Assembly (NCBI GenBank): GCA_004764695.1
Contig: SMSO01000032.1
Location: 248,001 to 312,000 of the forward strand
From: Schizochytrium sp. TIO01
Lineage: Eukaryota > Protista > Bigyra: Labyrinthulomycetes
Direction: 5' to 3'
DNA: 64,000 nucleotides
Positions 35,828-43,630 of the stretch are shown here, piece by piece. The notes below the pieces were generated by a model that was not told where the DNA came from, did not search any database, and saw only the letters and a list, made by a program, of their open reading frames with translations. Position 1 is the stretch's first letter. Each line of letters opens with the position of its first letter. The position numbers and the translations under genes are program-made.

Positions 35828-37149
35828 CTTCTTCACTTCCAGCGAAGATAACAATACAACCCTATGAAGGGCCGCAAATTATAGTGCTCGCCCTCTGTAG
35901 TTCTGGATCACCAGATATGTGTTCAAAAGATCCACTTTTGTAGAACTGCTTTCCAAGTGGGCCTAAGAAGAGGCCCAAGGTCACCGAGCAGACGTCATTG
36001 AGGATTCTGTTTATTATCCATTATGTTACTAATCAGTACCTACCTTCTATCGCCTCCGTAGATACTGTTAAGTACTAATGGACAAATCTACCGAGATGGA
36101 ACGATTTCGTACTTTGGCGTTTTCGTTTGGATGATGAACTAGACATGTATTGAGGACCCTGTGCGATGGCTTTACAAAAACATATGTTTGTCTGACATTT
36201 GAGAAGCTGTACGAAGTCAGCAAAAAGTAGAAGATATATAAGAAAGAAAGGTTAGTCATGTTGGTTTCTCACACAAAGATCCGAAATATCGTGTTTACTT
36301 GACGAATACCTGATTGATGGATGTACGAATACCTCCCCTCCCCCCCTCTTTGTTAAAAGAATCAAAGACAAGAATCAACCTATGTTGAATGCAGCTACGA
36401 ATGCAACTTTATATTGATTGTTTCAAGCCATCAAATCTCGGCGAGATGGGGAATCTTAGGTTAATAAACACTTAGCTTCGTACGTGGGACTGATATAGTT
36501 TGCTATATTTCCTTAGATTGAATTTCTACATTTTTCTTATTGAGAAAAGCATTCCGAACCAGCATGAAGCAGTAGAAACAACCGAGATCCCATGTCATTG
36601 CCAGAAAACTCATACATGCTATATTTTAAATTATGTATATAGATCATTTTTCCGAATGAACCCTCTAGCTCAACTGGAGTGCAGCAAACATTCCTGGAAA
36701 AATTTCTAATGTTTTATGAGCTTATTTGCTTTGCCAATGCTTCATTCATTTCTTACAGTAAAGTAAAGGATAAAAGATAAAGGGGTTATGAGCCTGCTAC
36801 CATAAATTTATCTTCTTTTTCATATTGATCCGTTGGGTTCACCGTCGATAGACATACTTTACAGCATAAAGGAGAACAATATTGCCTAGCAAATAGAATT
36901 TAGCACCGTTCTAAGTATGCTAAGCTCCCTTTATTCCAAGGTTTCAAATGTTATCACACCCTGAGCAACTTTAGATCCATTGCATAGGCACAAAGTAATA
37001 TATGTGTATATGTAGTAGCGTTAATTTCTTGATGTGTGCGATCGTTCTATACTTTTGTAGGACACGGCAAGTCTAACTCACTTGGTGGACGGGGCAATCG
37101 TCGATGGCAGAATTGCGTTGATCAATTTGGTGTAGCTTTACTGTCCACT

Positions 37150-39111
37150 ATGTCAGAAAGATCAAGTGAGCAAGCCAGCGATCCACATGCGAAGGATGGG
37201 GTAAACGAGAACAATGACGAGATTGAAAATCACATTCCTGAAAATACTCCTGCGTCAGAAAACAAGTCAGAGGACGCAACAAACACCAGCGCGAGGGCGG
37301 AAGAAGAGCAAGCACAATTTGAAAGCGATAGACAGGTTCAAAGTAACGTTGATCTTAAAGAAGAGGAAAGTGACAACTCTGGGCAAGATCCGCCAGTACA
37401 GGAAACATCCAATGCTGAGACATTAAGCCGCAACGTTCACAACGACGGCGAAAGTAAAGCTAACGCAGACGCCGAAGCCTTTTTAAAGGAGTCTAACATT
37501 GATGTCAAAGAGAGAACACAAGAGGGTGACATTGCCGGTACCGACACGTCCAATAAAGAGGAAGTGAGTGCAAAGAAGGCTCCAATAGAAGAACAGCAAG
37601 AAGCTACTGGTCCGGAAGCATCCCAAGAAACTCATTCCAGAAACGATACTGAGCAAGTACAAAATGCTGTGGAGGAGAGCAAATCTGCTACAGCAGGAGA
37701 TGACTTGAACGAACCTGAAGATATTAACAGCAGCAACAACGAATCAAAATTCTCGGATCGAGATGAGGAAGAAGCAAAGTCTGATATTAGAAACGAGGAA
37801 GAATCAGTCAAACCTGTCGAATCAAAAACTGTAGATCAAGATGAAGATAAGTATGTTGATGAAGATGAATCTAAAATCGAGAGCGCCCGTAAGAGCTCGC
37901 GAGAAGCTGAAGACAATGGCACAGAGGAAGAGGCTGTAAAAGATGAAGCAGAAGAATCAAAGTATGAATCTTCTCCCAGGTCACGTTTCTCACGCGAGGA
38001 AGGTCTAAGTAGCTATCGGAGCCGAGAAGAAACCAAAGAGATCGAAGCAAGCATGGAGGAGGAATATGATGATGCAGACTTTGAAGGAGAATCTAAAGTT
38101 ATCGAAGATGAATCAAAAAGTGTAGAAATCCCAATTCTTAAGAGACCAAACGATATCGAGATACGGGACTCTTCTGAGAGCCATAAGAAATCGACTTCAC
38201 GTAAAGATAGCAATACAACAGCCAAAACGAGTATCAAGCCTTCCCCGCGCAGCACGGGGTCTTCGTCATCGGGGCCTAAAATTCCAAAAAGGACAAGTCA
38301 AAGCGGAGCTCCCAAACCAGCAAAATCATCTGTTTCATCGAGCATGAATAGTTCTAGATCTCGCGAGCCATCAACTCCCATGAGCAATGGACTACTTGCA
38401 ACTGACCGGTCTTCCGATCGGCCATATGACGAAAGGAATATGTCCGAGATCCAGCTAGAACTTCGCAAAGAGAAGAAATTAAGACGCTCACTAGAAGATG
38501 ACATCAAGCTTCTAAAGAATCGATTACAACATTTAAAGAGCGAGCACGACTCGACCCAACGGAAAATTGCGGAAACCAGAACAAGAGTTCAGCAGATTCG
38601 AGAGCAGAGAAGTGACCGCATGGAACGGTCTCAGTTTCTTCAAGATCGAAAAGAAAGCCATGCCTCGCTTGTAGTTCAGGATACTGAGAAGAACAACCGA
38701 TTGCGAGATGAAGCACGAAAAAAGCGAGAACATGCTTTTAGGCAGCAGCTTGTACAAAAGAAAACTCTCACGCAGCATTATCAAGAACAGAAACATCGCA
38801 TGCTTGCAGAGAAAAAGAAGCTCGAGGCAGAATGGCAGCGAGAGAAAGAAGAAAAACGAAAGGAACGGCTACAACAGGTACAGAGGAAACGTGAGGAGCA
38901 ACAACGCCGTGAAGCTGAGTTTCAACGGCAGCGACAAGTAGAAAAGGCCCGGCAACTTGCCCGCGAGGCGAAGCGAGTTCGTGAAAAGGAGGAAGAGGTT
39001 CGTCAATTGGAAGAATTAGAAAGAAAGCTTATTGAAGAATTACGTGCAGCACACCGAGAGCAGCAAGGCGCATATCAGAGCTTAGAGGAGTCCCTTACTT
39101 TGCCCACTTAA
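37150..39111 (+). CDS. Acidic disordered N-terminal half plus C-terminal charged coiled-coil, function unknown
   Basis: About 650-aa ORF from ATG 37150; E/D/S-rich region, then LKNRLQHLKSE... and an E/K/R/Q helix ending AYQSLEESL. Confidence 0.8.
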   Translation: MSERSSEQASDPHAKDGVNENNDEIENHIPENTPASENKSEDATNTSARAEEEQAQFESDRQVQSNVDLKEEESDNSGQDPPVQETSNAETLSRNVHNDGESKANADAEAFLKESNIDVKERTQEGDIAGTDTSNKEEVSAKKAPIEEQQEATGPEASQETHSRNDTEQVQNAVEESKSATAGDDLNEPEDINSSNNESKFSDRDEEEAKSDIRNEEESVKPVESKTVDQDEDKYVDEDESKIESARKSSREAEDNGTEEEAVKDEAEESKYESSPRSRFSREEGLSSYRSREETKEIEASMEEEYDDADFEGESKVIEDESKSVEIPILKRPNDIEIRDSSESHKKSTSRKDSNTTAKTSIKPSPRSTGSSSSGPKIPKRTSQSGAPKPAKSSVSSSMNSSRSREPSTPMSNGLLATDRSSDRPYDERNMSEIQLELRKEKKLRRSLEDDIKLLKNRLQHLKSEHDSTQRKIAETRTRVQQIREQRSDRMERSQFLQDRKESHASLVVQDTEKNNRLRDEARKKREHAFRQQLVQKKTLTQHYQEQKHRMLAEKKKLEAEWQREKEEKRKERLQQVQRKREEQQRREAEFQRQRQVEKARQLAREAKRVREKEEEVRQLEELERKLIEELRAAHREQQGAYQSLEESLTLPT

Positions 39112-42100
39112 AAACCATAACTTTATATAGTTGAATTGCTTCCCATTCTGCTTGTGACAGAGGTGGACGACCTTGTGTTTTGAGGCCTACAACAGCCATG
39201 GAGTGCAGCATAGATTCATATTCATGGCACTTTGAGGCAACGAAGGAGGAGAGATTCTGCGATACGATCATTTCTAGCCCATGTTTAGCGGCCATTGCCT
39301 TGATGCGTGTCTCTGGGACGATAAACTCTTCACAGTCTTGTACAGCGTCCCCGAGTGAGAAAGAGTACGCGCTACCAAATGCAAGGTCTGCTGCGTCCTC
39401 TGGAAGCTCCTCACGGAACTTTACCGAGCATACATCATTGCTAAAGCTTGGACGACGGGCATGTAAGATGTCGGCATCCGTGGTAGACATGAGCAACAGC
39501 GGCTCAAAGTCTTGTTCACCGTCTCCATGTTTGCGAAGAGCTTGTTCACAAATTGTAAAAAATCGTTCACAGCGTGCCTCATCACTGCACAGATAATGAA
39601 AGGCAAACTGTACACTAATCACATCAAACGAGCGACCCTTGATTGCTTCGTTCTCCAGCAATGCCAAGTCTGAAATGTCAGATTCTACAAACACGTGCGT
39701 TTGGCCTTGGGCACGGGAACGCGCTTCCACAAGAGCAACGCTGGCAATATCTACGCCAACGTAAGATTCAATTTGTGACGCACTGGCTCGCCACTTGTTT
39801 AGATCGCCACCACGCCCGCAAGCCAAATCAAGAATGCTCATAGGGCGGCTCTGTTTAGCTTGAGAACGCTCTGCGCCACGGATAGCTTCCCGAATTGCTT
39901 TAAATGACATAGGTGGATGCTTCGAAGGTTTCAACTCACCCGGAATCGCAGGCAAAGTATCCACCTTGCTCTGACCCACATCAAGAGGCGTAAGTTTGCC
40001 CATGCAGCATTCATGAATAAGCACGGCCTTCGACCAGTTATTCAGCTTGCGCAAATTCTCGATACCGGCATCAAGTTGACCCTTACCCTTGCTGTTACGC
40101 TCAGTCTGGCGCTCATTGTAGTGAGCTGCGACAGCATCAGAGCCTTCCAGCATGCCTGAAGGATGTTGGTGCACAAGATCTTTGAGGCGTAAGATCAGAC
40201 TATCTACGGATACATTTTCGGCCACAGACTCAAGAACAGTCCAGCCGGTACGAAGTGAGTTCGGCCGAACCTTATCTACACGAGCCCGCTGACCGCGCCA
40301 GCACCCAGACTGTGTATCAAATCTACACTCAACGATGCTGCTTGCCGGCCCGCGGCCACCACGACTCTTAGTATTTTTGCTGCATGCTTGTCTCAGGGTG
40401 TCGTCCATCTCTGCCTCAGCAAGCTCCACATCAGCCATGCCTGAGCGTCCATTCACGGTCACATGCTCCATGAGAAAAATGGGAACTCGGGGTTTGTTCA
40501 GGTCACGCGCAAAAACACGAAAATCTACGGTCAAGTCATGGACAGGTTTGTATTTCACAACCGTGTATTCATAATAATTCTTTCCTGCAGGGGTGAATAC
40601 AAGGCCATCGCACTGGATTGCACCAATGTGGTCATACGTATATTCCTTGGCGGCGGAGCGCAAAGTTTGGACAGAGTCCACATCAACGAATTTCTTGTCA
40701 ACGAGATAAAAGCTGCCAATCTGAGCCAGATCGCCACGAAATTCTTGCCATGCCGTCATTCGTTTACGCAAGTCTGGGACAGCACCAACATCTTCCTCCC
40801 CGATACGAACTGCATCAAAAACGAGATACCCGTTTTGCGCAACAACTTCGCCATCGAGAAGAAGCCAATCTTTATCCCCGAGATCCTCTTTTGGCAATGT
40901 TCCAACAAACTGGAAAGTCCACGAGCGATCCACGAGGAAACATTCGCGCCCAGGGCCCGGAAAGCCAATCAACATGTGTCGCACTCCATCAGACTTTTCG
41001 CACACAACCCAGCGTTTATGCTCACGCCCAATATCATTGAGCTTCGAGAGGCGGAAAGGCTCGGCGCGTGGGCCAGGAATGTCTCGGTGGTTCATATAAA
41101 ACTTCACATTACGGTCGGGGCAGTTCCGCTTCATCACCTCACTTGAGGTGAAGAGAGTAGCCACACGGTCTCGTAAATACAGCTGCTGAATCGTGTCCAA
41201 ACTTGGCAATCTCTCCATAGAGCCTCGGCGTGCTTGTCCAGCATACTGGTCGAGAGCGACGCAGAATGCGCCCTTGGGATCAAGAATGGAGTCACTGTTG
41301 TCATTCGTATCAAAATCCGGAACAAGAACACACGTGCTCATCGGGTTACGCTCAAACTTCTCAGCATGGTTATCCAAGAGGAGCGTGTTCGAGGCATCAA
41401 AGCGGTCCCCAAACTTTTCCCAAATGTTGCCCAAGTCTTTTAAAAACAAGGGTTTTTCCACGGACACTACAGAAGTACGAGGCCACTCGTTTGAGGAGTT
41501 CTCTTGGTCCCACTGGAACAGAACACGATCTGGGTACGCCTGAAAGAGCTCCATCTCCATGTTCTTGCGTTTGCCGCAGGACCATACGCCCACATGAAAT
41601 CGCTCCATGCAAAAGTGAATAAATTCATCGCAGAAGGGCCGGCGAGCAAAGCTTGCACGGGGACCACCACGCCCGCGTTCTTTGAAGTTCGGGCGGTTCA
41701 CAAGGACACCATTCAGGTCCAAGATGATAAGCGGTGCATCGGACTCTGGCTCTCGCGAAAGATTCCAGCGCAACACAGGAAGGCCATTTGGGAGAACCTT
41801 TGTCACAGTCACAGTTTTGAGCGATTGTACGGCTCCGGAACCTCTCCAGAGCTCAATGTTCTCCACAAGACCATAGGTGTTTGCTTTGATCTCCACAAGA
41901 GTACCCCCTTGGCCCACTTCCACAACCTTGACATTCGCGAACTCTTGGCCAACCTCAATGCCGGCTTGAGATTGCTGCTGAGCGAAATCTCTCTGCACAA
42001 AACTCACAAAACCAGCCTGTGAGGAAGCTGTCGATGAAGGAGATGCTCCACGACGCGAGTTGTTCCCGCGATCAAAGCGTGAGTTTCCACCACCACCACC

Positions 42101-42445
42101 ATTGTTGTTGTTGCCATTGTTGTTATTGTTGCCGCCATTGTTGCCAACTGTCTGCCAGCTTCCATTGCCGCCAAAGTTGCCACGATCGAAGCGCGAATTG
42201 CCACGATTATTGCCAAAATTGCCATTGTTGTTGTTGCTGCTGCTGCTACTGCTGCTGTTGTTATTGTTGTTGTTGTTGTTGCTGCTGCTGCTATTATTGT
42301 TGTTATTGTTGCTGTTGCTGCCGCCGCTGTTGTTGTTGTTGTTATTGTTGTGGCGTCCACGGCTGCCTCCACCGCGTCCATTTCTGCCTCCACCGCGTCC
42401 GGCGCCGCCGGCGCCGCCGTCGTTGTCGCGTCTGCGCCAGTCCAT
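39095..42445 (-). CDS. Multidomain mRNA capping enzyme: N/G/RGG-rich tail, S1-like, FCP1/NIF-type HAD phosphatase, RNA guanylyltransferase with OB fold, cap guanine-N7 methyltransferase
   Basis: GTase motifs I CEKSDG (KSDG at 40996-40985), III LLDGEV, IIIa YLVFDA, IV DGLVFTP, V KYKP..TVDF, VI RVDK.RPN. MTase VAAHYN, LRKLNNWSKAVLI, ILDLACGRGGDLNKW, GVDIA, FDVISVQFAFHY. HAD IILDLNGVL, RRPFCDEF, GVWS, KDL, TLLLDN..EK. Confidence 0.92.
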   Translation of the reverse strand: MDWRRRDNDGGAGGAGRGGGRNGRGGGSRGRHNNNNNNNSGGSNSNNNNNNSSSSNNNNNNNNSSSSSSSNNNNGNFGNNRGNSRFDRGNFGGNGSWQTVGNNGGNNNNNGNNNNGGGGGNSRFDRGNNSRRGASPSSTASSQAGFVSFVQRDFAQQQSQAGIEVGQEFANVKVVEVGQGGTLVEIKANTYGLVENIELWRGSGAVQSLKTVTVTKVLPNGLPVLRWNLSREPESDAPLIILDLNGVLVNRPNFKERGRGGPRASFARRPFCDEFIHFCMERFHVGVWSCGKRKNMEMELFQAYPDRVLFQWDQENSSNEWPRTSVVSVEKPLFLKDLGNIWEKFGDRFDASNTLLLDNHAEKFERNPMSTCVLVPDFDTNDNSDSILDPKGAFCVALDQYAGQARRGSMERLPSLDTIQQLYLRDRVATLFTSSEVMKRNCPDRNVKFYMNHRDIPGPRAEPFRLSKLNDIGREHKRWVVCEKSDGVRHMLIGFPGPGRECFLVDRSWTFQFVGTLPKEDLGDKDWLLLDGEVVAQNGYLVFDAVRIGEEDVGAVPDLRKRMTAWQEFRGDLAQIGSFYLVDKKFVDVDSVQTLRSAAKEYTYDHIGAIQCDGLVFTPAGKNYYEYTVVKYKPVHDLTVDFRVFARDLNKPRVPIFLMEHVTVNGRSGMADVELAEAEMDDTLRQACSKNTKSRGGRGPASSIVECRFDTQSGCWRGQRARVDKVRPNSLRTGWTVLESVAENVSVDSLILRLKDLVHQHPSGMLEGSDAVAAHYNERQTERNSKGKGQLDAGIENLRKLNNWSKAVLIHECCMGKLTPLDVGQSKVDTLPAIPGELKPSKHPPMSFKAIREAIRGAERSQAKQSRPMSILDLACGRGGDLNKWRASASQIESYVGVDIASVALVEARSRAQGQTHVFVESDISDLALLENEAIKGRSFDVISVQFAFHYLCSDEARCERFFTICEQALRKHGDGEQDFEPLLLMSTTDADILHARRPSFSNDVCSVKFREELPEDAADLAFGSAYSFSLGDAVQDCEEFIVPETRIKAMAAKHGLEMIVSQNLSSFVASKCHEYESMLHSMAVVGLKTQGRPPLSQAEWEAIQLYKVMVFKWAK
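42090..42350. repeat. Coding trinucleotide repeats (AAC/AAT/AGC on the minus strand) encoding poly-Asn/Ser
   Basis: Read directly; lies in the N-terminal low-complexity tail of the capping enzyme. Confidence 0.9.
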
Positions 42446-43630
42446 GGCTGCGAGTCGCTTTGGGTCCCGCCGCGCCGCAAACGAGGCCGAGAGGAGCGGA
42501 TCTCCCGCACCTGCACCAAGCTGATTGCGGTCTGCTGTCTCTTCTTTCGCTCGCTCCCTGTTACTGTCTCAGTGCCAAATCAATCAATTGATTCATTGAT
42601 TTCTTTCGATTTCTTTTGATTTCTTTCTTTTTGTCCATGTCTTTGATTCATTGACTTCTTTGATTCTTTCTCTTTCCTCTTTTCAATGTTATCAAGAGAT
42701 AACAATCGGCCGCGCTCTTACGATCTCGTCTCCACTCCAATTCCTTCAGTGCCATTGCGCTTTAGCCTACTTGTGAGGCAGAATACTCTACTGTATCTCA
42801 GTGAACTCCCATTCAGTGGGCTCACGGAAAGTGGGTTATAGCGCACCTGCATGGAACAGTGGAGGAATGGGATTAATCTTGTGCTAGACTCGCCGCGGGA
42901 GTGAGAATTTAGATGAGCCGCGATCTGTACGTCGTTGTTCATTGTACTAGGTACCCACCTACTCTCCTCATGCTCAAGCTTTCTGAGCCAGCATAGATGG
43001 TCATGAACCCAAGCAGTGAAGCGATTGCGTTGAAGAGAATTAGCGCAACTAAAAGCTGAATGAATGAGAAGATTTTGTAAATTGCACCTAATGAATATGG
43101 AACTTAAACGTTTGAGGGGATCTCTACTACAGCAACATTGCTGAGTCTTCGCTTGGGACGGCGACTAAGGACGGAGAAAGATGACGCACGTACGCAGGAA
43201 TCAAGTGAAGTGGTAGGCACTTATGGCAAAGAGCATACATAGGTGATTGACCGCGTTGCAGAAAAGCAATGAGAGTGTCTGTGCTTCAGTGATTGTCATG
43301 TTTTACTCAAGGTCAACTAATTTGCCGCCATTTTTTGCCTACTAGATGCAATGAAGTGATCCATTTTCATCAAGGTTTTGTTTATCGCTAAAACTGAGCC
43401 GTACCGAGCCGTCCAGAATCATTAGCTGACCTTGTAAGCTAGCCTCCATCGAAGGTTGCTCTTTCCTGCGAGATATATAGAGAAATATTCTACTACCCAA
43501 GCCAACATGAAGTCGAAGTTGGTAAGTTTGCGTTTGCACGTCGGGAATGCTCACAAAAAGAACTTTTCAATCTGTGATGATCATCATAAATTACACTACC
43601 AATATACTTTTCATTATGATGTTGAAATAA

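What the first reader, a model, noticed from the sequence alone, without database searches (positions are those of the whole stretch)
39095..42445. Single-chain capping enzyme with a HAD (FCP1/NIF-type) phosphatase in the RNA-triphosphatase position
Seen: one uninterrupted 1116-aa ORF with a poly-Asn/RGG tail, an S1-like OB domain (~41955-41765), a HAD domain (DLNGVL at 41719, GVWS, KDL, LLDN), a complete guanylyltransferase (KSDG plus motifs III-VI) and a complete cap N7-methyltransferase. Established: the capping triphosphatases I know are cysteine phosphatases (animals, plants) or triphosphate tunnel metalloenzymes (fungi, protozoa, large DNA viruses). TPase-GTase-MTase order occurs in pox/mimivirus enzymes, and GTase-MTase fusions occur in Giardia and trypanosome Cgm1. 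Inference: the HAD domain may be a third class of capping RNA triphosphatase. Its DxN motif keeps the nucleophile but lacks the general-acid Asp, which suits phosphoanhydride cleavage (P-type ATPases also lack that Asp). Alternatively it is a Pol II CTD phosphatase or reader, or part of a cytoplasmic recapping enzyme.
Basis: partly seen in the sequence, partly recalled or inferred. Interest (0 to 1): 0.9.

Follow-up and report, generated by a model that had tools for sequence, protein, structure and literature searches.

The report
Capping enzyme fused to unusual phosphatase
This marine protist gene encodes a second mRNA-capping enzyme fused to an unusual phosphatase-like domain; the same fusion occurs across stramenopile algae and in giant viruses, so the domain may be a new kind of RNA 5'-triphosphatase, though no activity has been shown.

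Summary
Window 39095-42445 (-) is one uninterrupted 1116-aa ORF. From the N-terminus it has a poly-Asn/RGG region, an S1-like beta-barrel, an FCP/SCP(NIF)-type HAD domain, a complete guanylyltransferase and a cap N7-methyltransferase.

The fusion is real and old. The same architecture is found in Mucochytrium, Nannochloropsis/Microchloropsis, Chrysoparadoxa and Chrysophaeum. An S1-HAD-GTase version without the methyltransferase sits on a giant-virus MAG contig and in about 8 metagenomic clusters.

The HAD domain is the best conserved part of the protein. It keeps the Asp nucleophile, the Ser, the Lys and the DN metal motif. The residue two places after the nucleophile is always Asn, as in all 126 readable sequences among the 150 nearest HAD domains (plants, viruses, stramenopiles).

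The genome has a canonical set as well: a Cet1/Pct1-type tunnel triphosphatase fused to another cap methyltransferase, plus a separate guanylyltransferase. So this gene is a second, paralogous capping enzyme, and no triphosphatase gap needs filling.

That the HAD is the triphosphatase is my favoured reading, at about 0.4, but it is unproven. I found no paper on this architecture. The scan also noted a third triphosphatase-like gene in this genome (s1-834225).

The parts
39095..42445 (-). Whole ORF, 1116 aa plus stop: low-complexity region, S1-like barrel, HAD (D-x-N), GTase, cap N7-MTase
   Evidence: Homologues with the same architecture.
41996..42445 (-). N-terminal low-complexity region (residues 1-150): poly-Asn/Ser, RGG boxes, two GNSRFDRGN repeats
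   Evidence: Translation. Not conserved among homologues (10% identity). Masked as a repeat in read laying (42217-42358).
41762..41953 (-). S1-like OB beta-barrel (residues about 165-228)
   Evidence: AF2 strands. Foldseek hits to S1 domains, E about 2e-3, probability 1.0. No Pfam S1 hit. Sequence weakly conserved (15%), but a barrel-like segment lies at the same place in homologues and in the viral ORFs.
41270..41740 (-). FCP/SCP (NIF)-type HAD domain (residues 236-392), D-x-N subfamily
   Evidence: Pfam NIF E 1.5e-13. Foldseek: CTDNEP1, Scp1, UBLCP1, Tim50, Fcp1. Profile hit to UBLCP1, E 1.6e-13. 49% mean identity and 20% invariant columns, the highest of all domains.
41702..41719 (-). HAD motif I, D243-L-N245-G-V-L: nucleophile Asp kept, Asn in place of the general acid/base Asp
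   Evidence: D-x-N in 126 of 126 readable motifs among the top 150 HAD relatives.
41576..41587 (-). HAD motif II, V-W288-S289-C290
   Evidence: Invariant W and C, near-invariant S.
41432..41455 (-). HAD motif III region, K331-P-L-F-L-K336-D-L. K336 aligns with the motif III Lys. It is preceded by the conserved W-P-R323-x-S325 segment.
   Evidence: Invariant columns. Alignment to UBLCP1.
41342..41383 (-). HAD motif IV, L-L-L-D358-N359-H360-A-E362-K-F-E365-R-N-P. D-(N/D)-H-x-E-K is a signature of the GTase-linked HADs, cellular and viral.
40193..41023 (-). mRNA guanylyltransferase: nucleotidyltransferase plus OB domains (residues 475-751). Motif I K484-S-D-G, III DGE, IIIa FD, IV DG, V K-x-K, VI R-x-D-K.
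   Evidence: Pfam. Motif columns. 25% identical to the genome's canonical GTase.
39107..39862 (-). Cap guanine-N7 methyltransferase (residues 862-1113) with the VLDLACGRGGDL SAM motif
   Evidence: Pfam E 1.3e-45. Alignment. 23% identical to the genome's other cap MTase.

Best explanation
This is a real, intron-less gene that appears to be transcribed. It encodes a second, paralogous cap-forming enzyme of a thraustochytrid (labyrinthulomycete) stramenopile. It coexists with a canonical set made of a TTM triphosphatase-MTase fusion and a separate GTase.

Shown: the GTase and MTase halves carry all their catalytic motifs and should make GpppN and then m7GpppN.

Shown: the S1-like barrel and the HAD domain in front of them form a conserved module with the GTase (S1-HAD-GTase). 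Giant-virus MAG sequences carry the same module. The HAD domain belongs to an uncharacterised D-x-N branch of the FCP/SCP phosphatases.

Inferred: the HAD most likely prepares the RNA 5' end for the GTase. The S1-like barrel and the RGG region would hold the RNA. Asp243, with Mg2+ held by Asp358/Asn359, would attack the gamma-phosphate of pppRNA. ppRNA is a good leaving group and would not need the missing general acid. The aspartyl-phosphate would then be hydrolysed, perhaps with help from the conserved His360/Glu362. The ppRNA would pass to Lys484-GMP and then to the methyltransferase.

Confidence by step: about 0.95 that it is a genuine single gene, that the module is conserved, and that it is a second capping system; about 0.4 that the HAD is the RNA triphosphatase.
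For: - Single ORF with four domains above Pfam cut-offs.
- Continuous contigs in probable RNA runs, with no joints.
- The orthologue is a complete MMETSP transcript in Mucochytrium.
- The architecture is conserved in labyrinthulomycetes, eustigmatophytes, Chrysoparadoxa and a pelagophyte.
- The canonical set lies elsewhere in the genome: a 428-aa GTase and a 902-aa TTM-MTase. The N-terminal fold of the latter matches Pct1, T. cruzi Cet1, yeast Cet1 and the mimivirus TPase.
- The HAD is the most constrained domain: 49% identity and 20% invariant columns, against about 31-33% and 8-9% for GTase and MTase.
- The nucleophile, motifs II to IV and several extra Arg/Lys residues are invariant. Asn at +2 is invariant.
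- S1-HAD-GTase without the MTase occurs on a giant-virus MAG contig and in about 8 metagenomic clusters with virus-like composition. This parallels the TPase-GTase order of the known bifunctional enzymes.
- HAD-linked GTases, cellular and viral, lie apart from the genome's canonical GTase, which sits on a long branch; the split between them is weakly supported (41/81).
- LHPP is a precedent for a HAD without Asp at +2 acting on phosphoanhydride and P-N bonds (PMC11277029).
Against: - No activity data exist, and none can be obtained with these tools.
- The genome already has a tunnel-type triphosphatase, so no functional gap forces this reading. Trypanosome Cgm1 also relies on a separate Cet1 (PMC8311971).
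- From my own knowledge, every characterised FCP/SCP-family member is a protein phosphatase or, like Tim50, a non-catalytic binder. The nearest solved relatives are UBLCP1, Scp1 and CTDNEP1.
- Most D-x-N HADs are standalone proteins in plants and giant viruses. Their activity cannot be specific to capping.
- From memory, Asp-to-Asn changes at +2 in studied HAD phosphatases cripple turnover.
- I could not examine whether the viruses carrying S1-HAD-GTase lack any other triphosphatase.
Confidence: 0.42

Rival explanations
1. The HAD domain is a phospho-CTD module, or more generally a phosphoprotein module. It would be either a Ser5-P phosphatase or, because the acid/base Asp is replaced, a slow-turnover 'substrate trap' reader. 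It would dock this capping enzyme on RNA polymerase II or Spt5. The triphosphatase step would be done in trans by the TTM enzyme.
For: - Fold and sequence are closest to Scp1, Fcp1, CTDNEP1 and UBLCP1, all protein phosphatases.
- Capping enzymes are recruited by the Ser5-P CTD (PMC8311971).
- The genome has a working-looking tunnel triphosphatase.
- Cgm1 in trypanosomes also uses a separate Cet1.
Against: - The same S1-HAD-GTase module occurs on a giant-virus MAG contig. Coupling to a heptad CTD is not expected there; this is my inference, as I did not inspect the viral polymerases.
- An S1-like RNA-binding barrel sits directly beside the HAD.
- The insertion segment that gives Scp1 its CTD specificity is replaced by a different, invariant W-P-R-x-S...K-P-L-F-L-K segment.
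- The invariance of the whole catalytic constellation except Asp+2 is more than a docking module needs.
Confidence: 0.22
2. The HAD domain is a phosphoanhydride hydrolase that does not act on RNA. It could, for example, be an LHPP-like inorganic pyrophosphatase that removes the PPi released when the GTase forms Lys-GMP and so pulls capping forward. That general activity would also explain the standalone plant and viral D-x-N proteins.
For: - LHPP, a HAD with a non-Asp residue at +2, hydrolyses pyrophosphate (PMC11277029).
- D-x-N HADs are mostly standalone and widespread, which fits a generic small-substrate activity.
Against: - FCP/SCP-type HADs have no cap domain and open active sites. From my own knowledge, such sites usually serve macromolecular substrates.
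- The tight, conserved pairing with an S1-like barrel suggests RNA.
- The GTase-linked HADs carry their own signature (D-N/D-H-x-E-K, W/F-P-R) that is absent from the standalone forms.
Confidence: 0.1
3. The HAD domain is a phosphotransferase for recapping, or a non-hydrolytic sensor of the 5' end. Without a general base, the aspartyl-phosphate formed from ATP or pppRNA would be protected from water. It could then be passed to 5'-monophosphate RNA to give ppRNA, the role that the P-loop kinase domain plays in trypanosome Ce1. Alternatively, the pocket simply recognises the 5' phosphates.
For: - There is a precedent for a kinase-GTase recapping enzyme (PMC11417388 abstract; PMC8311971).
- The protein is a second capping system beside a canonical one.
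- The RGG/poly-Asn region and the S1-like barrel suggest RNA-granule-type RNA binding.
- Loss of only the acid/base residue is what one expects if hydrolysis must be suppressed. This is my inference.
Against: - I know of no HAD that phosphorylates a nucleic-acid 5' phosphate.
- It needs more assumptions than simple hydrolysis.
- The viral homologues would need de novo capping, not recapping.
Confidence: 0.08
4. The fusion is an assembly or gene-model artefact, or the HAD is a decayed pseudo-domain with no function.
For: Poly-Asn repeats can confuse assemblies. The read tool skipped 42217-42358 as a repeat.
Against: - The frame is uninterrupted across all domains.
- Independent contigs from 4 runs in 4 studies span HAD-GTase-MTase.
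- The same architecture occurs in many taxa, including transcriptome-derived proteins.
- The HAD is the most conserved domain.
Confidence: 0.02

Closest known systems
Trypanosoma brucei Cgm1 (bifunctional GTase-MTase), within a dual capping system (Cet1 + Cgm1 in the nucleus; Ce1 + Cmt1 in the cytoplasm)
   Same: A GTase-MTase fusion in one chain. The organism also has a second GTase and a second cap MTase, and a separate tunnel-type triphosphatase (PMC8311971).
   Different: Here an S1-like barrel and a D-x-N HAD domain precede the GTase, and the tunnel triphosphatase is fused to the other MTase. I did not test whether Cgm1's N-terminal extension has anything HAD-like. No spliced-leader system is known to me in stramenopiles.
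Trifunctional TPase-GTase-MTase enzymes of mimivirus (R382) and poxviruses (D1)
   Same: All cap-0 activities could lie in one chain, in the same N-to-C order. A viral relative of the module exists.
   Different: Their first domain is a triphosphate tunnel metalloenzyme. Here it is a HAD fold, and its activity is unknown.
Metazoan/plant bifunctional capping enzyme (Mce1/RNGTT): cysteine-phosphatase TPase fused to GTase
   Same: A phosphatase-fold domain using a covalent phospho-enzyme chemistry, placed directly N-terminal to the GTase. The viral S1-HAD-GTase proteins (about 650-710 aa) mirror this two-domain layout.
   Different: A different fold and nucleophile (Asp with Mg2+ rather than Cys). 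The genome's own Mce1-like domain is a separate gene, with Cys replaced by Ser and a WW domain.
FCP/SCP family HAD phosphatases (Scp1, Fcp1, CTDNEP1, UBLCP1; Pfam NIF)
   Same: Same fold and insertion topology. The nucleophile Asp, motif II Ser, motif III Lys and motif IV Asp-Asn are present as in Scp1.
   Different: Motif I is D-x-N-G, not D-x-D-x-T/V, invariantly. The insertion segment has a different conserved signature. The domain is fused to S1-like and GTase domains.
LHPP (phospholysine phosphohistidine inorganic pyrophosphate phosphatase)
   Same: A HAD enzyme that keeps the nucleophile Asp but lacks Asp at +2 (it has Ser). It acts on pyrophosphate and P-N bonds, which have good leaving groups (PMC11277029).
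   Different: It belongs to the NagD-type capped HADs, acts on small molecules, and is unrelated in sequence beyond the superfamily.
Trypanosome Ce1 (RNA 5'-kinase-GTase recapping enzyme)
   Same: An end-preparing domain fused N-terminal to a GTase in a non-canonical, second capping system (abstract).
   Different: A P-loop kinase domain, not a HAD. It works on 5'-monophosphate RNA.

Membership tests
FCP/SCP (NIF, PF03031) HAD phosphatases | HAD Rossmann-like core with the FCP/SCP-type insertion; Pfam NIF above the gathering score | tested here: met
   Pfam 51.1 bits against a cut-off of 21.8. Foldseek E 1.5e-8 to 1e-6 to CTDNEP1, Scp1 and UBLCP1. Profile against UBLCP1, E 1.6e-13.
FCP/SCP (NIF, PF03031) HAD phosphatases | Motif I D-x-D-x-(T/V): nucleophile Asp plus general acid/base Asp at +2 | tested here: not met
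   Motif I is D243-L-N245-G-V-L. Asn at +2 is invariant in the 16 homologues and in 126 of 126 readable motifs among the nearest 150 HADs.
FCP/SCP (NIF, PF03031) HAD phosphatases | Motif II Ser/Thr, motif III Lys, motif IV acidic pair (D-D or D-N) that binds Mg2+ | tested here: met
   S289, K336 and D358-N359 are invariant or nearly so, aligned to the UBLCP1 motifs.
FCP/SCP (NIF, PF03031) HAD phosphatases | Phosphoprotein (CTD) phosphatase activity | not testable with these tools
   Needs enzyme assays with phospho-CTD peptides.
mRNA guanylyltransferase (covalent nucleotidyltransferase superfamily) | Motifs I (KxDG), III, IIIa, IV, V (KxK) and VI, plus a C-terminal OB domain | tested here: met
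   Pfam PF01331 and PF03919 above cut-offs. K484-S-D-G, DGE, FD, DG, K-Y-K and R-V-D-K seen in conserved columns. Colinear alignment with the canonical GTase.
Cap guanine-N7 methyltransferase (PF03291) | Family profile match and the SAM-binding VLDLxCGxGGD motif | tested here: met
   Pfam E 1.3e-45. VLDLACGRGGDL is conserved.
Capping RNA triphosphatase, tunnel (Cet1/TTM) class | Eight-strand beta-barrel tunnel with two glutamate-rich metal motifs | tested here: not met
   The window ORF has no PF02940 hit and its pre-GTase domain folds as a HAD. The feature is met by a different gene, L004:13-2721: IEIEAR and FEVELE motifs, Foldseek hits to Pct1, Cet1 and mimivirus TPase.
Capping RNA triphosphatase, cysteine-phosphatase (Mce1/BVP) class | HCxxGxxR(S/T) P-loop with a Cys nucleophile | tested here: not met
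   No such domain in the window ORF. A separate gene, L014:427-1551, is Mce1-like (E 3.5e-12) but reads V-I-S-T-L-G-C-N-R-A-G, with Ser where the Cys should be.
RNA 5'-triphosphatase as a function (any fold) | Release of the gamma-phosphate from pppRNA to give ppRNA | not testable with these tools
   Only indirect support: domain order, the S1-like neighbour, the viral module and an intact phosphoryl-binding site.
Cgm1-type GTase-MTase fusion in a dual capping system | GTase and cap MTase in one chain, alongside a separate second GTase and second MTase | tested here: met
   I did not test orthology to kinetoplastid Cgm1.

The most novel reading that the evidence does not exclude
The D-x-N HAD domain is a third mechanistic class of capping RNA 5'-triphosphatase. 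It would work through an aspartyl-phosphate intermediate with Mg2+ and no general acid. The second capping enzyme of stramenopiles would use it, and so would a clade of giant viruses (as S1-HAD-GTase), in the place held by tunnel metalloenzymes or cysteine phosphatases elsewhere. The large standalone D-x-N branch in plants and giant viruses would then be candidate RNA 5'-polyphosphatases.
Probability: 0.4. Interest if true: 0.9.

Novelty: new variant of a known kind. Interest (0 to 1): 0.78.

Why it matters
From my own knowledge, two classes of cellular cap triphosphatase are known, tunnel metalloenzymes and cysteine phosphatases, and their distribution has been used as a marker of eukaryote phylogeny and as a drug-target argument. 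A HAD-type enzyme would add a third class and give a first function to a large uncharacterised D-x-N branch of the FCP/SCP family found in plants, stramenopiles and giant viruses.

Even if the HAD is not the triphosphatase, three points stand:
- Stramenopiles carry two parallel cap-forming systems, as trypanosomes do. This raises the question of which RNAs the second system caps.
- Some giant viruses appear to use the same module.
- The canonical system has an undescribed triphosphatase-methyltransferase fusion.

The hypothesis can be tested directly with one recombinant protein and two point mutants.

Tried and rejected
- **Genome search for the tunnel triphosphatase:** A search with PF02940 found nothing, and its controls did not ring either. 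This was a sensitivity failure. The tunnel domain turned up only through the fused MTase, then a weak Pfam hit (E 0.008), a profile hit to the mimivirus TPase and the fold search.
- **PDB search with the tunnel region alone:** This gave nothing meaningful.
- **Literature:** Six searches found no paper on a NIF/HAD-GTase fusion, a HAD-type RNA triphosphatase, or the DLNG motif. The library holds open-access papers only, so this is not proof that none exists.
- **ESM Atlas:** It only confirmed NIF family membership.
- **The look-up of encoding contigs:** I could not fetch the 54.8-kb contig that carries P0199, and so could not ask whether the viruses lack another triphosphatase.
- **IMG/VR scan with the viral ORF:** It found only the same contig. 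The one metagenome scan returned a 6.4-kb contig.
- **'HAD-less' GTase-MTase hits (P0018-P0023):** I considered these as evidence of domain loss or displacement. I set them aside because they nest beside the HAD-bearing P0013 on short branches and are probably truncated models. P0017 starts inside the HAD.
- **Endogenous giant-virus insertion:** Rejected. The neighbours are ordinary cellular genes, GC is even across the window, and orthologues follow stramenopile taxa.
- **Complex prediction:** Not run. I make no binding claim that a pass would change.
- **Organism name:** MMETSP0960 is 100% identical for the TTM-MTase protein, but the taxon id printed with it resolves to an unrelated fungus. 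I therefore name the organism only as a thraustochytrid close to Hondaea and Mucochytrium.

Full report
**1. The observation**

The minus strand of window 39095-42445 holds one open frame of 1116 codons from an ATG, with no stop. Pfam places four domains above their curated cut-offs:
- NIF, the FCP/SCP-type HAD phosphatase: residues 239-387, E 1.5e-13.
- mRNA_cap_enzyme: residues 475-625.
- mRNA_cap_C: residues 640-751.
- mRNA_G-N7_MeTrfase: residues 862-1113, E 1.3e-45.

- DLNGVL starts at residue 243, which is window 41719. KSDG is at residue 484.
- The first 150 residues are poly-Asn/Ser/Gly with RGG boxes.
- The 'S1-like' stretch has no Pfam hit. An AlphaFold model of residues 150-470, built on 16 homologues (pLDDT 80.4), has a five-strand barrel at residues about 168-227.
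- Foldseek matches that barrel to S1 domains of DHX8, RpsA and PNPase (E about 2e-3, probability 1.0). It matches the following domain to CTDNEP1, Scp1, UBLCP1, Tim50 and Fcp1 (E 1.5e-8 to 6e-4).

**2. One gene, apparently transcribed, in a cellular setting**

I laid contigs of four runs from four studies on 38800-42800.
- Three of the runs look like transcriptome assemblies: 21-35 million letters for a 64-Mb genome. This is a guess, as the tool itself warns.
- In the cleanest run, one 3258-nt contig covers 39034-42216 and a second covers 42359-42546, with no joints.
- The only hole is the Asn-codon repeat, which the tool masks.
- The ends lie about 60 nt beyond the stop and about 100 nt before the ATG. 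That fits one unspliced message covering HAD, GTase and MTase.

The neighbours are ordinary eukaryotic genes (RCC1/VPS9, Cdc37) and GC is even across the window.

The closest named relative is a complete transcript of Mucochytrium quahogii at 48% identity. The genome's TTM-MTase protein is 100% identical to an MMETSP0960 transcript and 69% identical to Hondaea fermentalgiana. The organism is therefore a thraustochytrid.

**3.

NIF + GTase + MTase in one chain is found in:
- Mucochytrium;
- Nannochloropsis and Microchloropsis;
- Chrysoparadoxa (partial);
- Chrysophaeum;
- many unnamed marine sequences.

In a 12-sequence comparison the HAD is the best conserved domain:

| Domain | Mean identity to the window protein | Invariant columns |
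|---|---|---|
| HAD | 49% | 20% |
| GTase (NTase / OB halves) | 31% / 28% | 9% / 8% |
| MTase | 33% | 8% |

The invariant HAD residues are:
- D243 and N245;
- R251 and R269;
- W288 and C290, with S289 nearly invariant;
- P322-R323 and S325;
- K331 and K336;
- D358, with N359 nearly invariant;
- H360 and E362-K-F-E365.

The nucleophile, the phosphate-binding Ser and Lys, and the metal-binding Asp-Asn (as in Scp1) are all kept. Only the acid/base Asp at +2 is replaced, always by Asn.

**4. A D-x-N branch of the FCP/SCP family**

A phmmer search with the HAD alone, against 1.84 billion representative proteins, gave 1325 hits at E <= 1e-3 and 458 at E <= 1e-10. Among the best 150, every readable motif I is D-x-N (126 of 126) and none is D-x-D. 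Two groups appear.
- **GTase-linked HADs.** They carry D-(N/D)-H-x-E-K after motif IV and a (W/F)-P-R...K-P-L-F-L-K segment.
- **Standalone HADs.** They carry L-L-L-D-D-S-P-Y-K and sit at the C-terminus of plant proteins annotated only as 'FCP1 homology domain-containing'. Some also have DUF724.

By sequence the nearest solved structure is UBLCP1 (profile E 1.6e-13). I found no paper on this branch.

**5. Giant viruses**

A scan of IMG/VR with the HAD profile found standalone D-x-N HADs on five giant-virus contigs. One of them lies beside a major capsid protein gene.

On GVMAG-S-3300012936-62 the scan found a 659-aa ORF with an S1-like N-terminus, LGLDINGIL, KPLFLKEI, LLIDNHQEKYE and then a full GTase (KTDG and the later motifs). 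Pfam finds NIF, mRNA_cap_enzyme and mRNA_cap_C in it. It is colinear with the window protein through the HAD, linker and GTase (E 9e-39).

About eight further clusters of 650-710-aa HAD-GTase proteins occur in metagenomes. The three I checked have the same Asn/Lys/Ile-rich composition. One sits next to a helicase that is 94% identical to the MAG's.

In a GTase tree the viral proteins form a well-supported clade among the HAD-linked GTases. The genome's canonical GTase sits far away on a long branch, and the fork that separates it from them is weakly supported (41/81).

**6. The canonical capping set is present**

- **GTase:** a 428-aa protein on another contig, with Pfam scores well above those of the window enzyme.
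- **Triphosphatase-MTase fusion:** a 902-aa protein whose C-terminal half is a cap MTase (E 3e-42). Its N-terminal 480 residues carry IEIEAR and FEVELE motifs. They give a weak PF02940 hit and a profile hit to the mimivirus triphosphatase (E 0.0017).
- **Fold of that N-terminal region:** the AlphaFold model has pLDDT 66. Its best Foldseek matches are S. pombe Pct1, T. cruzi Cet1, yeast Cet1 and the mimivirus triphosphatase (E 6e-7 to 2e-5, probability 1.0).
- **Divergence:** the two GTases are 25% identical and the two MTases 23%, so they are old paralogues.
- **Third triphosphatase-like gene:** Its P-loop reads V-I-S-T-L-G-C-N-R-A-G, with Ser where the nucleophilic Cys should be. It ends in an Ess1/Pin1-like WW domain.

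**7. What the HAD most likely does**

*Shown.* The pocket is built to hold Mg2+ and a phosphoryl group on Asp243. It is under stronger constraint than the two bona fide enzymes beside it. It is tied to an S1-like barrel and a GTase in both cells and viruses.

*Known.* HAD phosphomonoesterases need the Asp at +2 to protonate the alcohol leaving group. LHPP lacks it (Ser at +2) and works on pyrophosphate and P-N bonds (PMC11277029). From my own knowledge, P-type ATPases have Thr at that position.

*Inferred.* The substrate has a good leaving group. Given the neighbours, the 5' triphosphate of RNA is the simplest candidate, and ppRNA would be handed to the GTase. I put this at about 0.4.

*Rivals.*
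- A phospho-CTD reader or phosphatase (0.22). The fold relatives favour it. The viral module and the S1-like barrel count against it.
- A pyrophosphatase-type helper (0.1).
- A phosphotransferase or 5'-end sensor for recapping (0.08).
- The remainder is 'something else'.

The standalone plant and viral D-x-N proteins show that the chemistry is not confined to capping.

**8. Comparison with known systems, and novelty**

As a system it works like the trypanosome arrangement: a Cgm1-type GTase-MTase fusion beside a second GTase and MTase, with a separate tunnel triphosphatase (PMC8311971). In domain order it resembles the mimivirus and poxvirus trifunctional enzymes and the Mce1-type TPase-GTase enzyme.

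It is not a member of either known triphosphatase class; both were tested and not met. It is a member of the GTase and cap-MTase families, where all motifs are met. It belongs to the NIF family by fold and profile but fails the family's D-x-D motif.

Public databases hold the homologues only as hypothetical proteins or 'mRNA (guanine-N7)-methyltransferase', and I found no paper describing them. I rate it a new variant of a known kind. If the HAD proves to be the triphosphatase, it would be a new enzyme class for that step.

**9. Limits**
- There is no activity evidence.
- The 'RNA' status of the runs is a guess.
- The viral contigs are short.

Noticed in passing
L004:13-2721 (G000:C6:1809819-1812527, + strand): A 902-aa protein fuses a Cet1/Pct1-type tunnel RNA triphosphatase (about 480 aa, much larger than the 180-290-aa solved chains it matches) to a cap N7-methyltransferase. 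I do not know of a described TPase-MTase fusion without the GTase. It is conserved in Hondaea, Mucochytrium and other thraustochytrids.
   Followed up: partly
L014:427-1551 (-) = G000:C33:2149126-2150250: A 374-aa protein with an Mce1-type capping triphosphatase domain (1i9s, E 3.5e-12). Its P-loop Cys is replaced by Ser (VISTLGCNRAG). It also has a C-terminal Ess1/Pin1-like WW domain. It may be a CTD-docking pseudo-enzyme.
   Followed up: partly
L006:2454-7722 and L013:325-5732: Two giant-virus-like contigs share a DEAD-type helicase that is 94% identical. The adjacent S1-HAD-GTase genes are only about 40% identical. This suggests gene replacement or very uneven evolutionary rates at that locus.
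   Followed up: no
P0001 (Mucochytrium) and P0003, GTase motif I: The two closest homologues read E-K-S-N-G instead of E-K-S-D-G in GTase motif I. The Lys nucleophile is kept but the Asp of KxDG is Asn. The effect on activity is unknown.
   Followed up: no
L007:5983-6789, L008:3061-3558, L009:5986-6594, L011:5962-6582: Standalone 165-268-aa D-x-N HAD proteins on giant-virus contigs. On L008 the gene lies near a major-capsid-like ORF and an RNase H-like ORF. Function unknown.
   Followed up: no
P0067, P0070 (plant-type proteins): Proteins with two tandem D-x-N NIF domains fused to DUF724 domains. The plant branch of this HAD subfamily appears to be entirely uncharacterised.
   Followed up: no
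window 37036-39111 (+): A convergent 691-aa ORF with no Pfam match overlaps the last 17 bases of the capping-enzyme ORF (39095-39111). In two runs, contigs run through both genes.
   Followed up: no
/: The MMETSP0960 header carries TAXON_ID=87120, which the current NCBI taxonomy resolves to a basidiomycete (Rhizopogon burlinghamii). The id in that record should not be trusted for naming the organism.
   Followed up: partly
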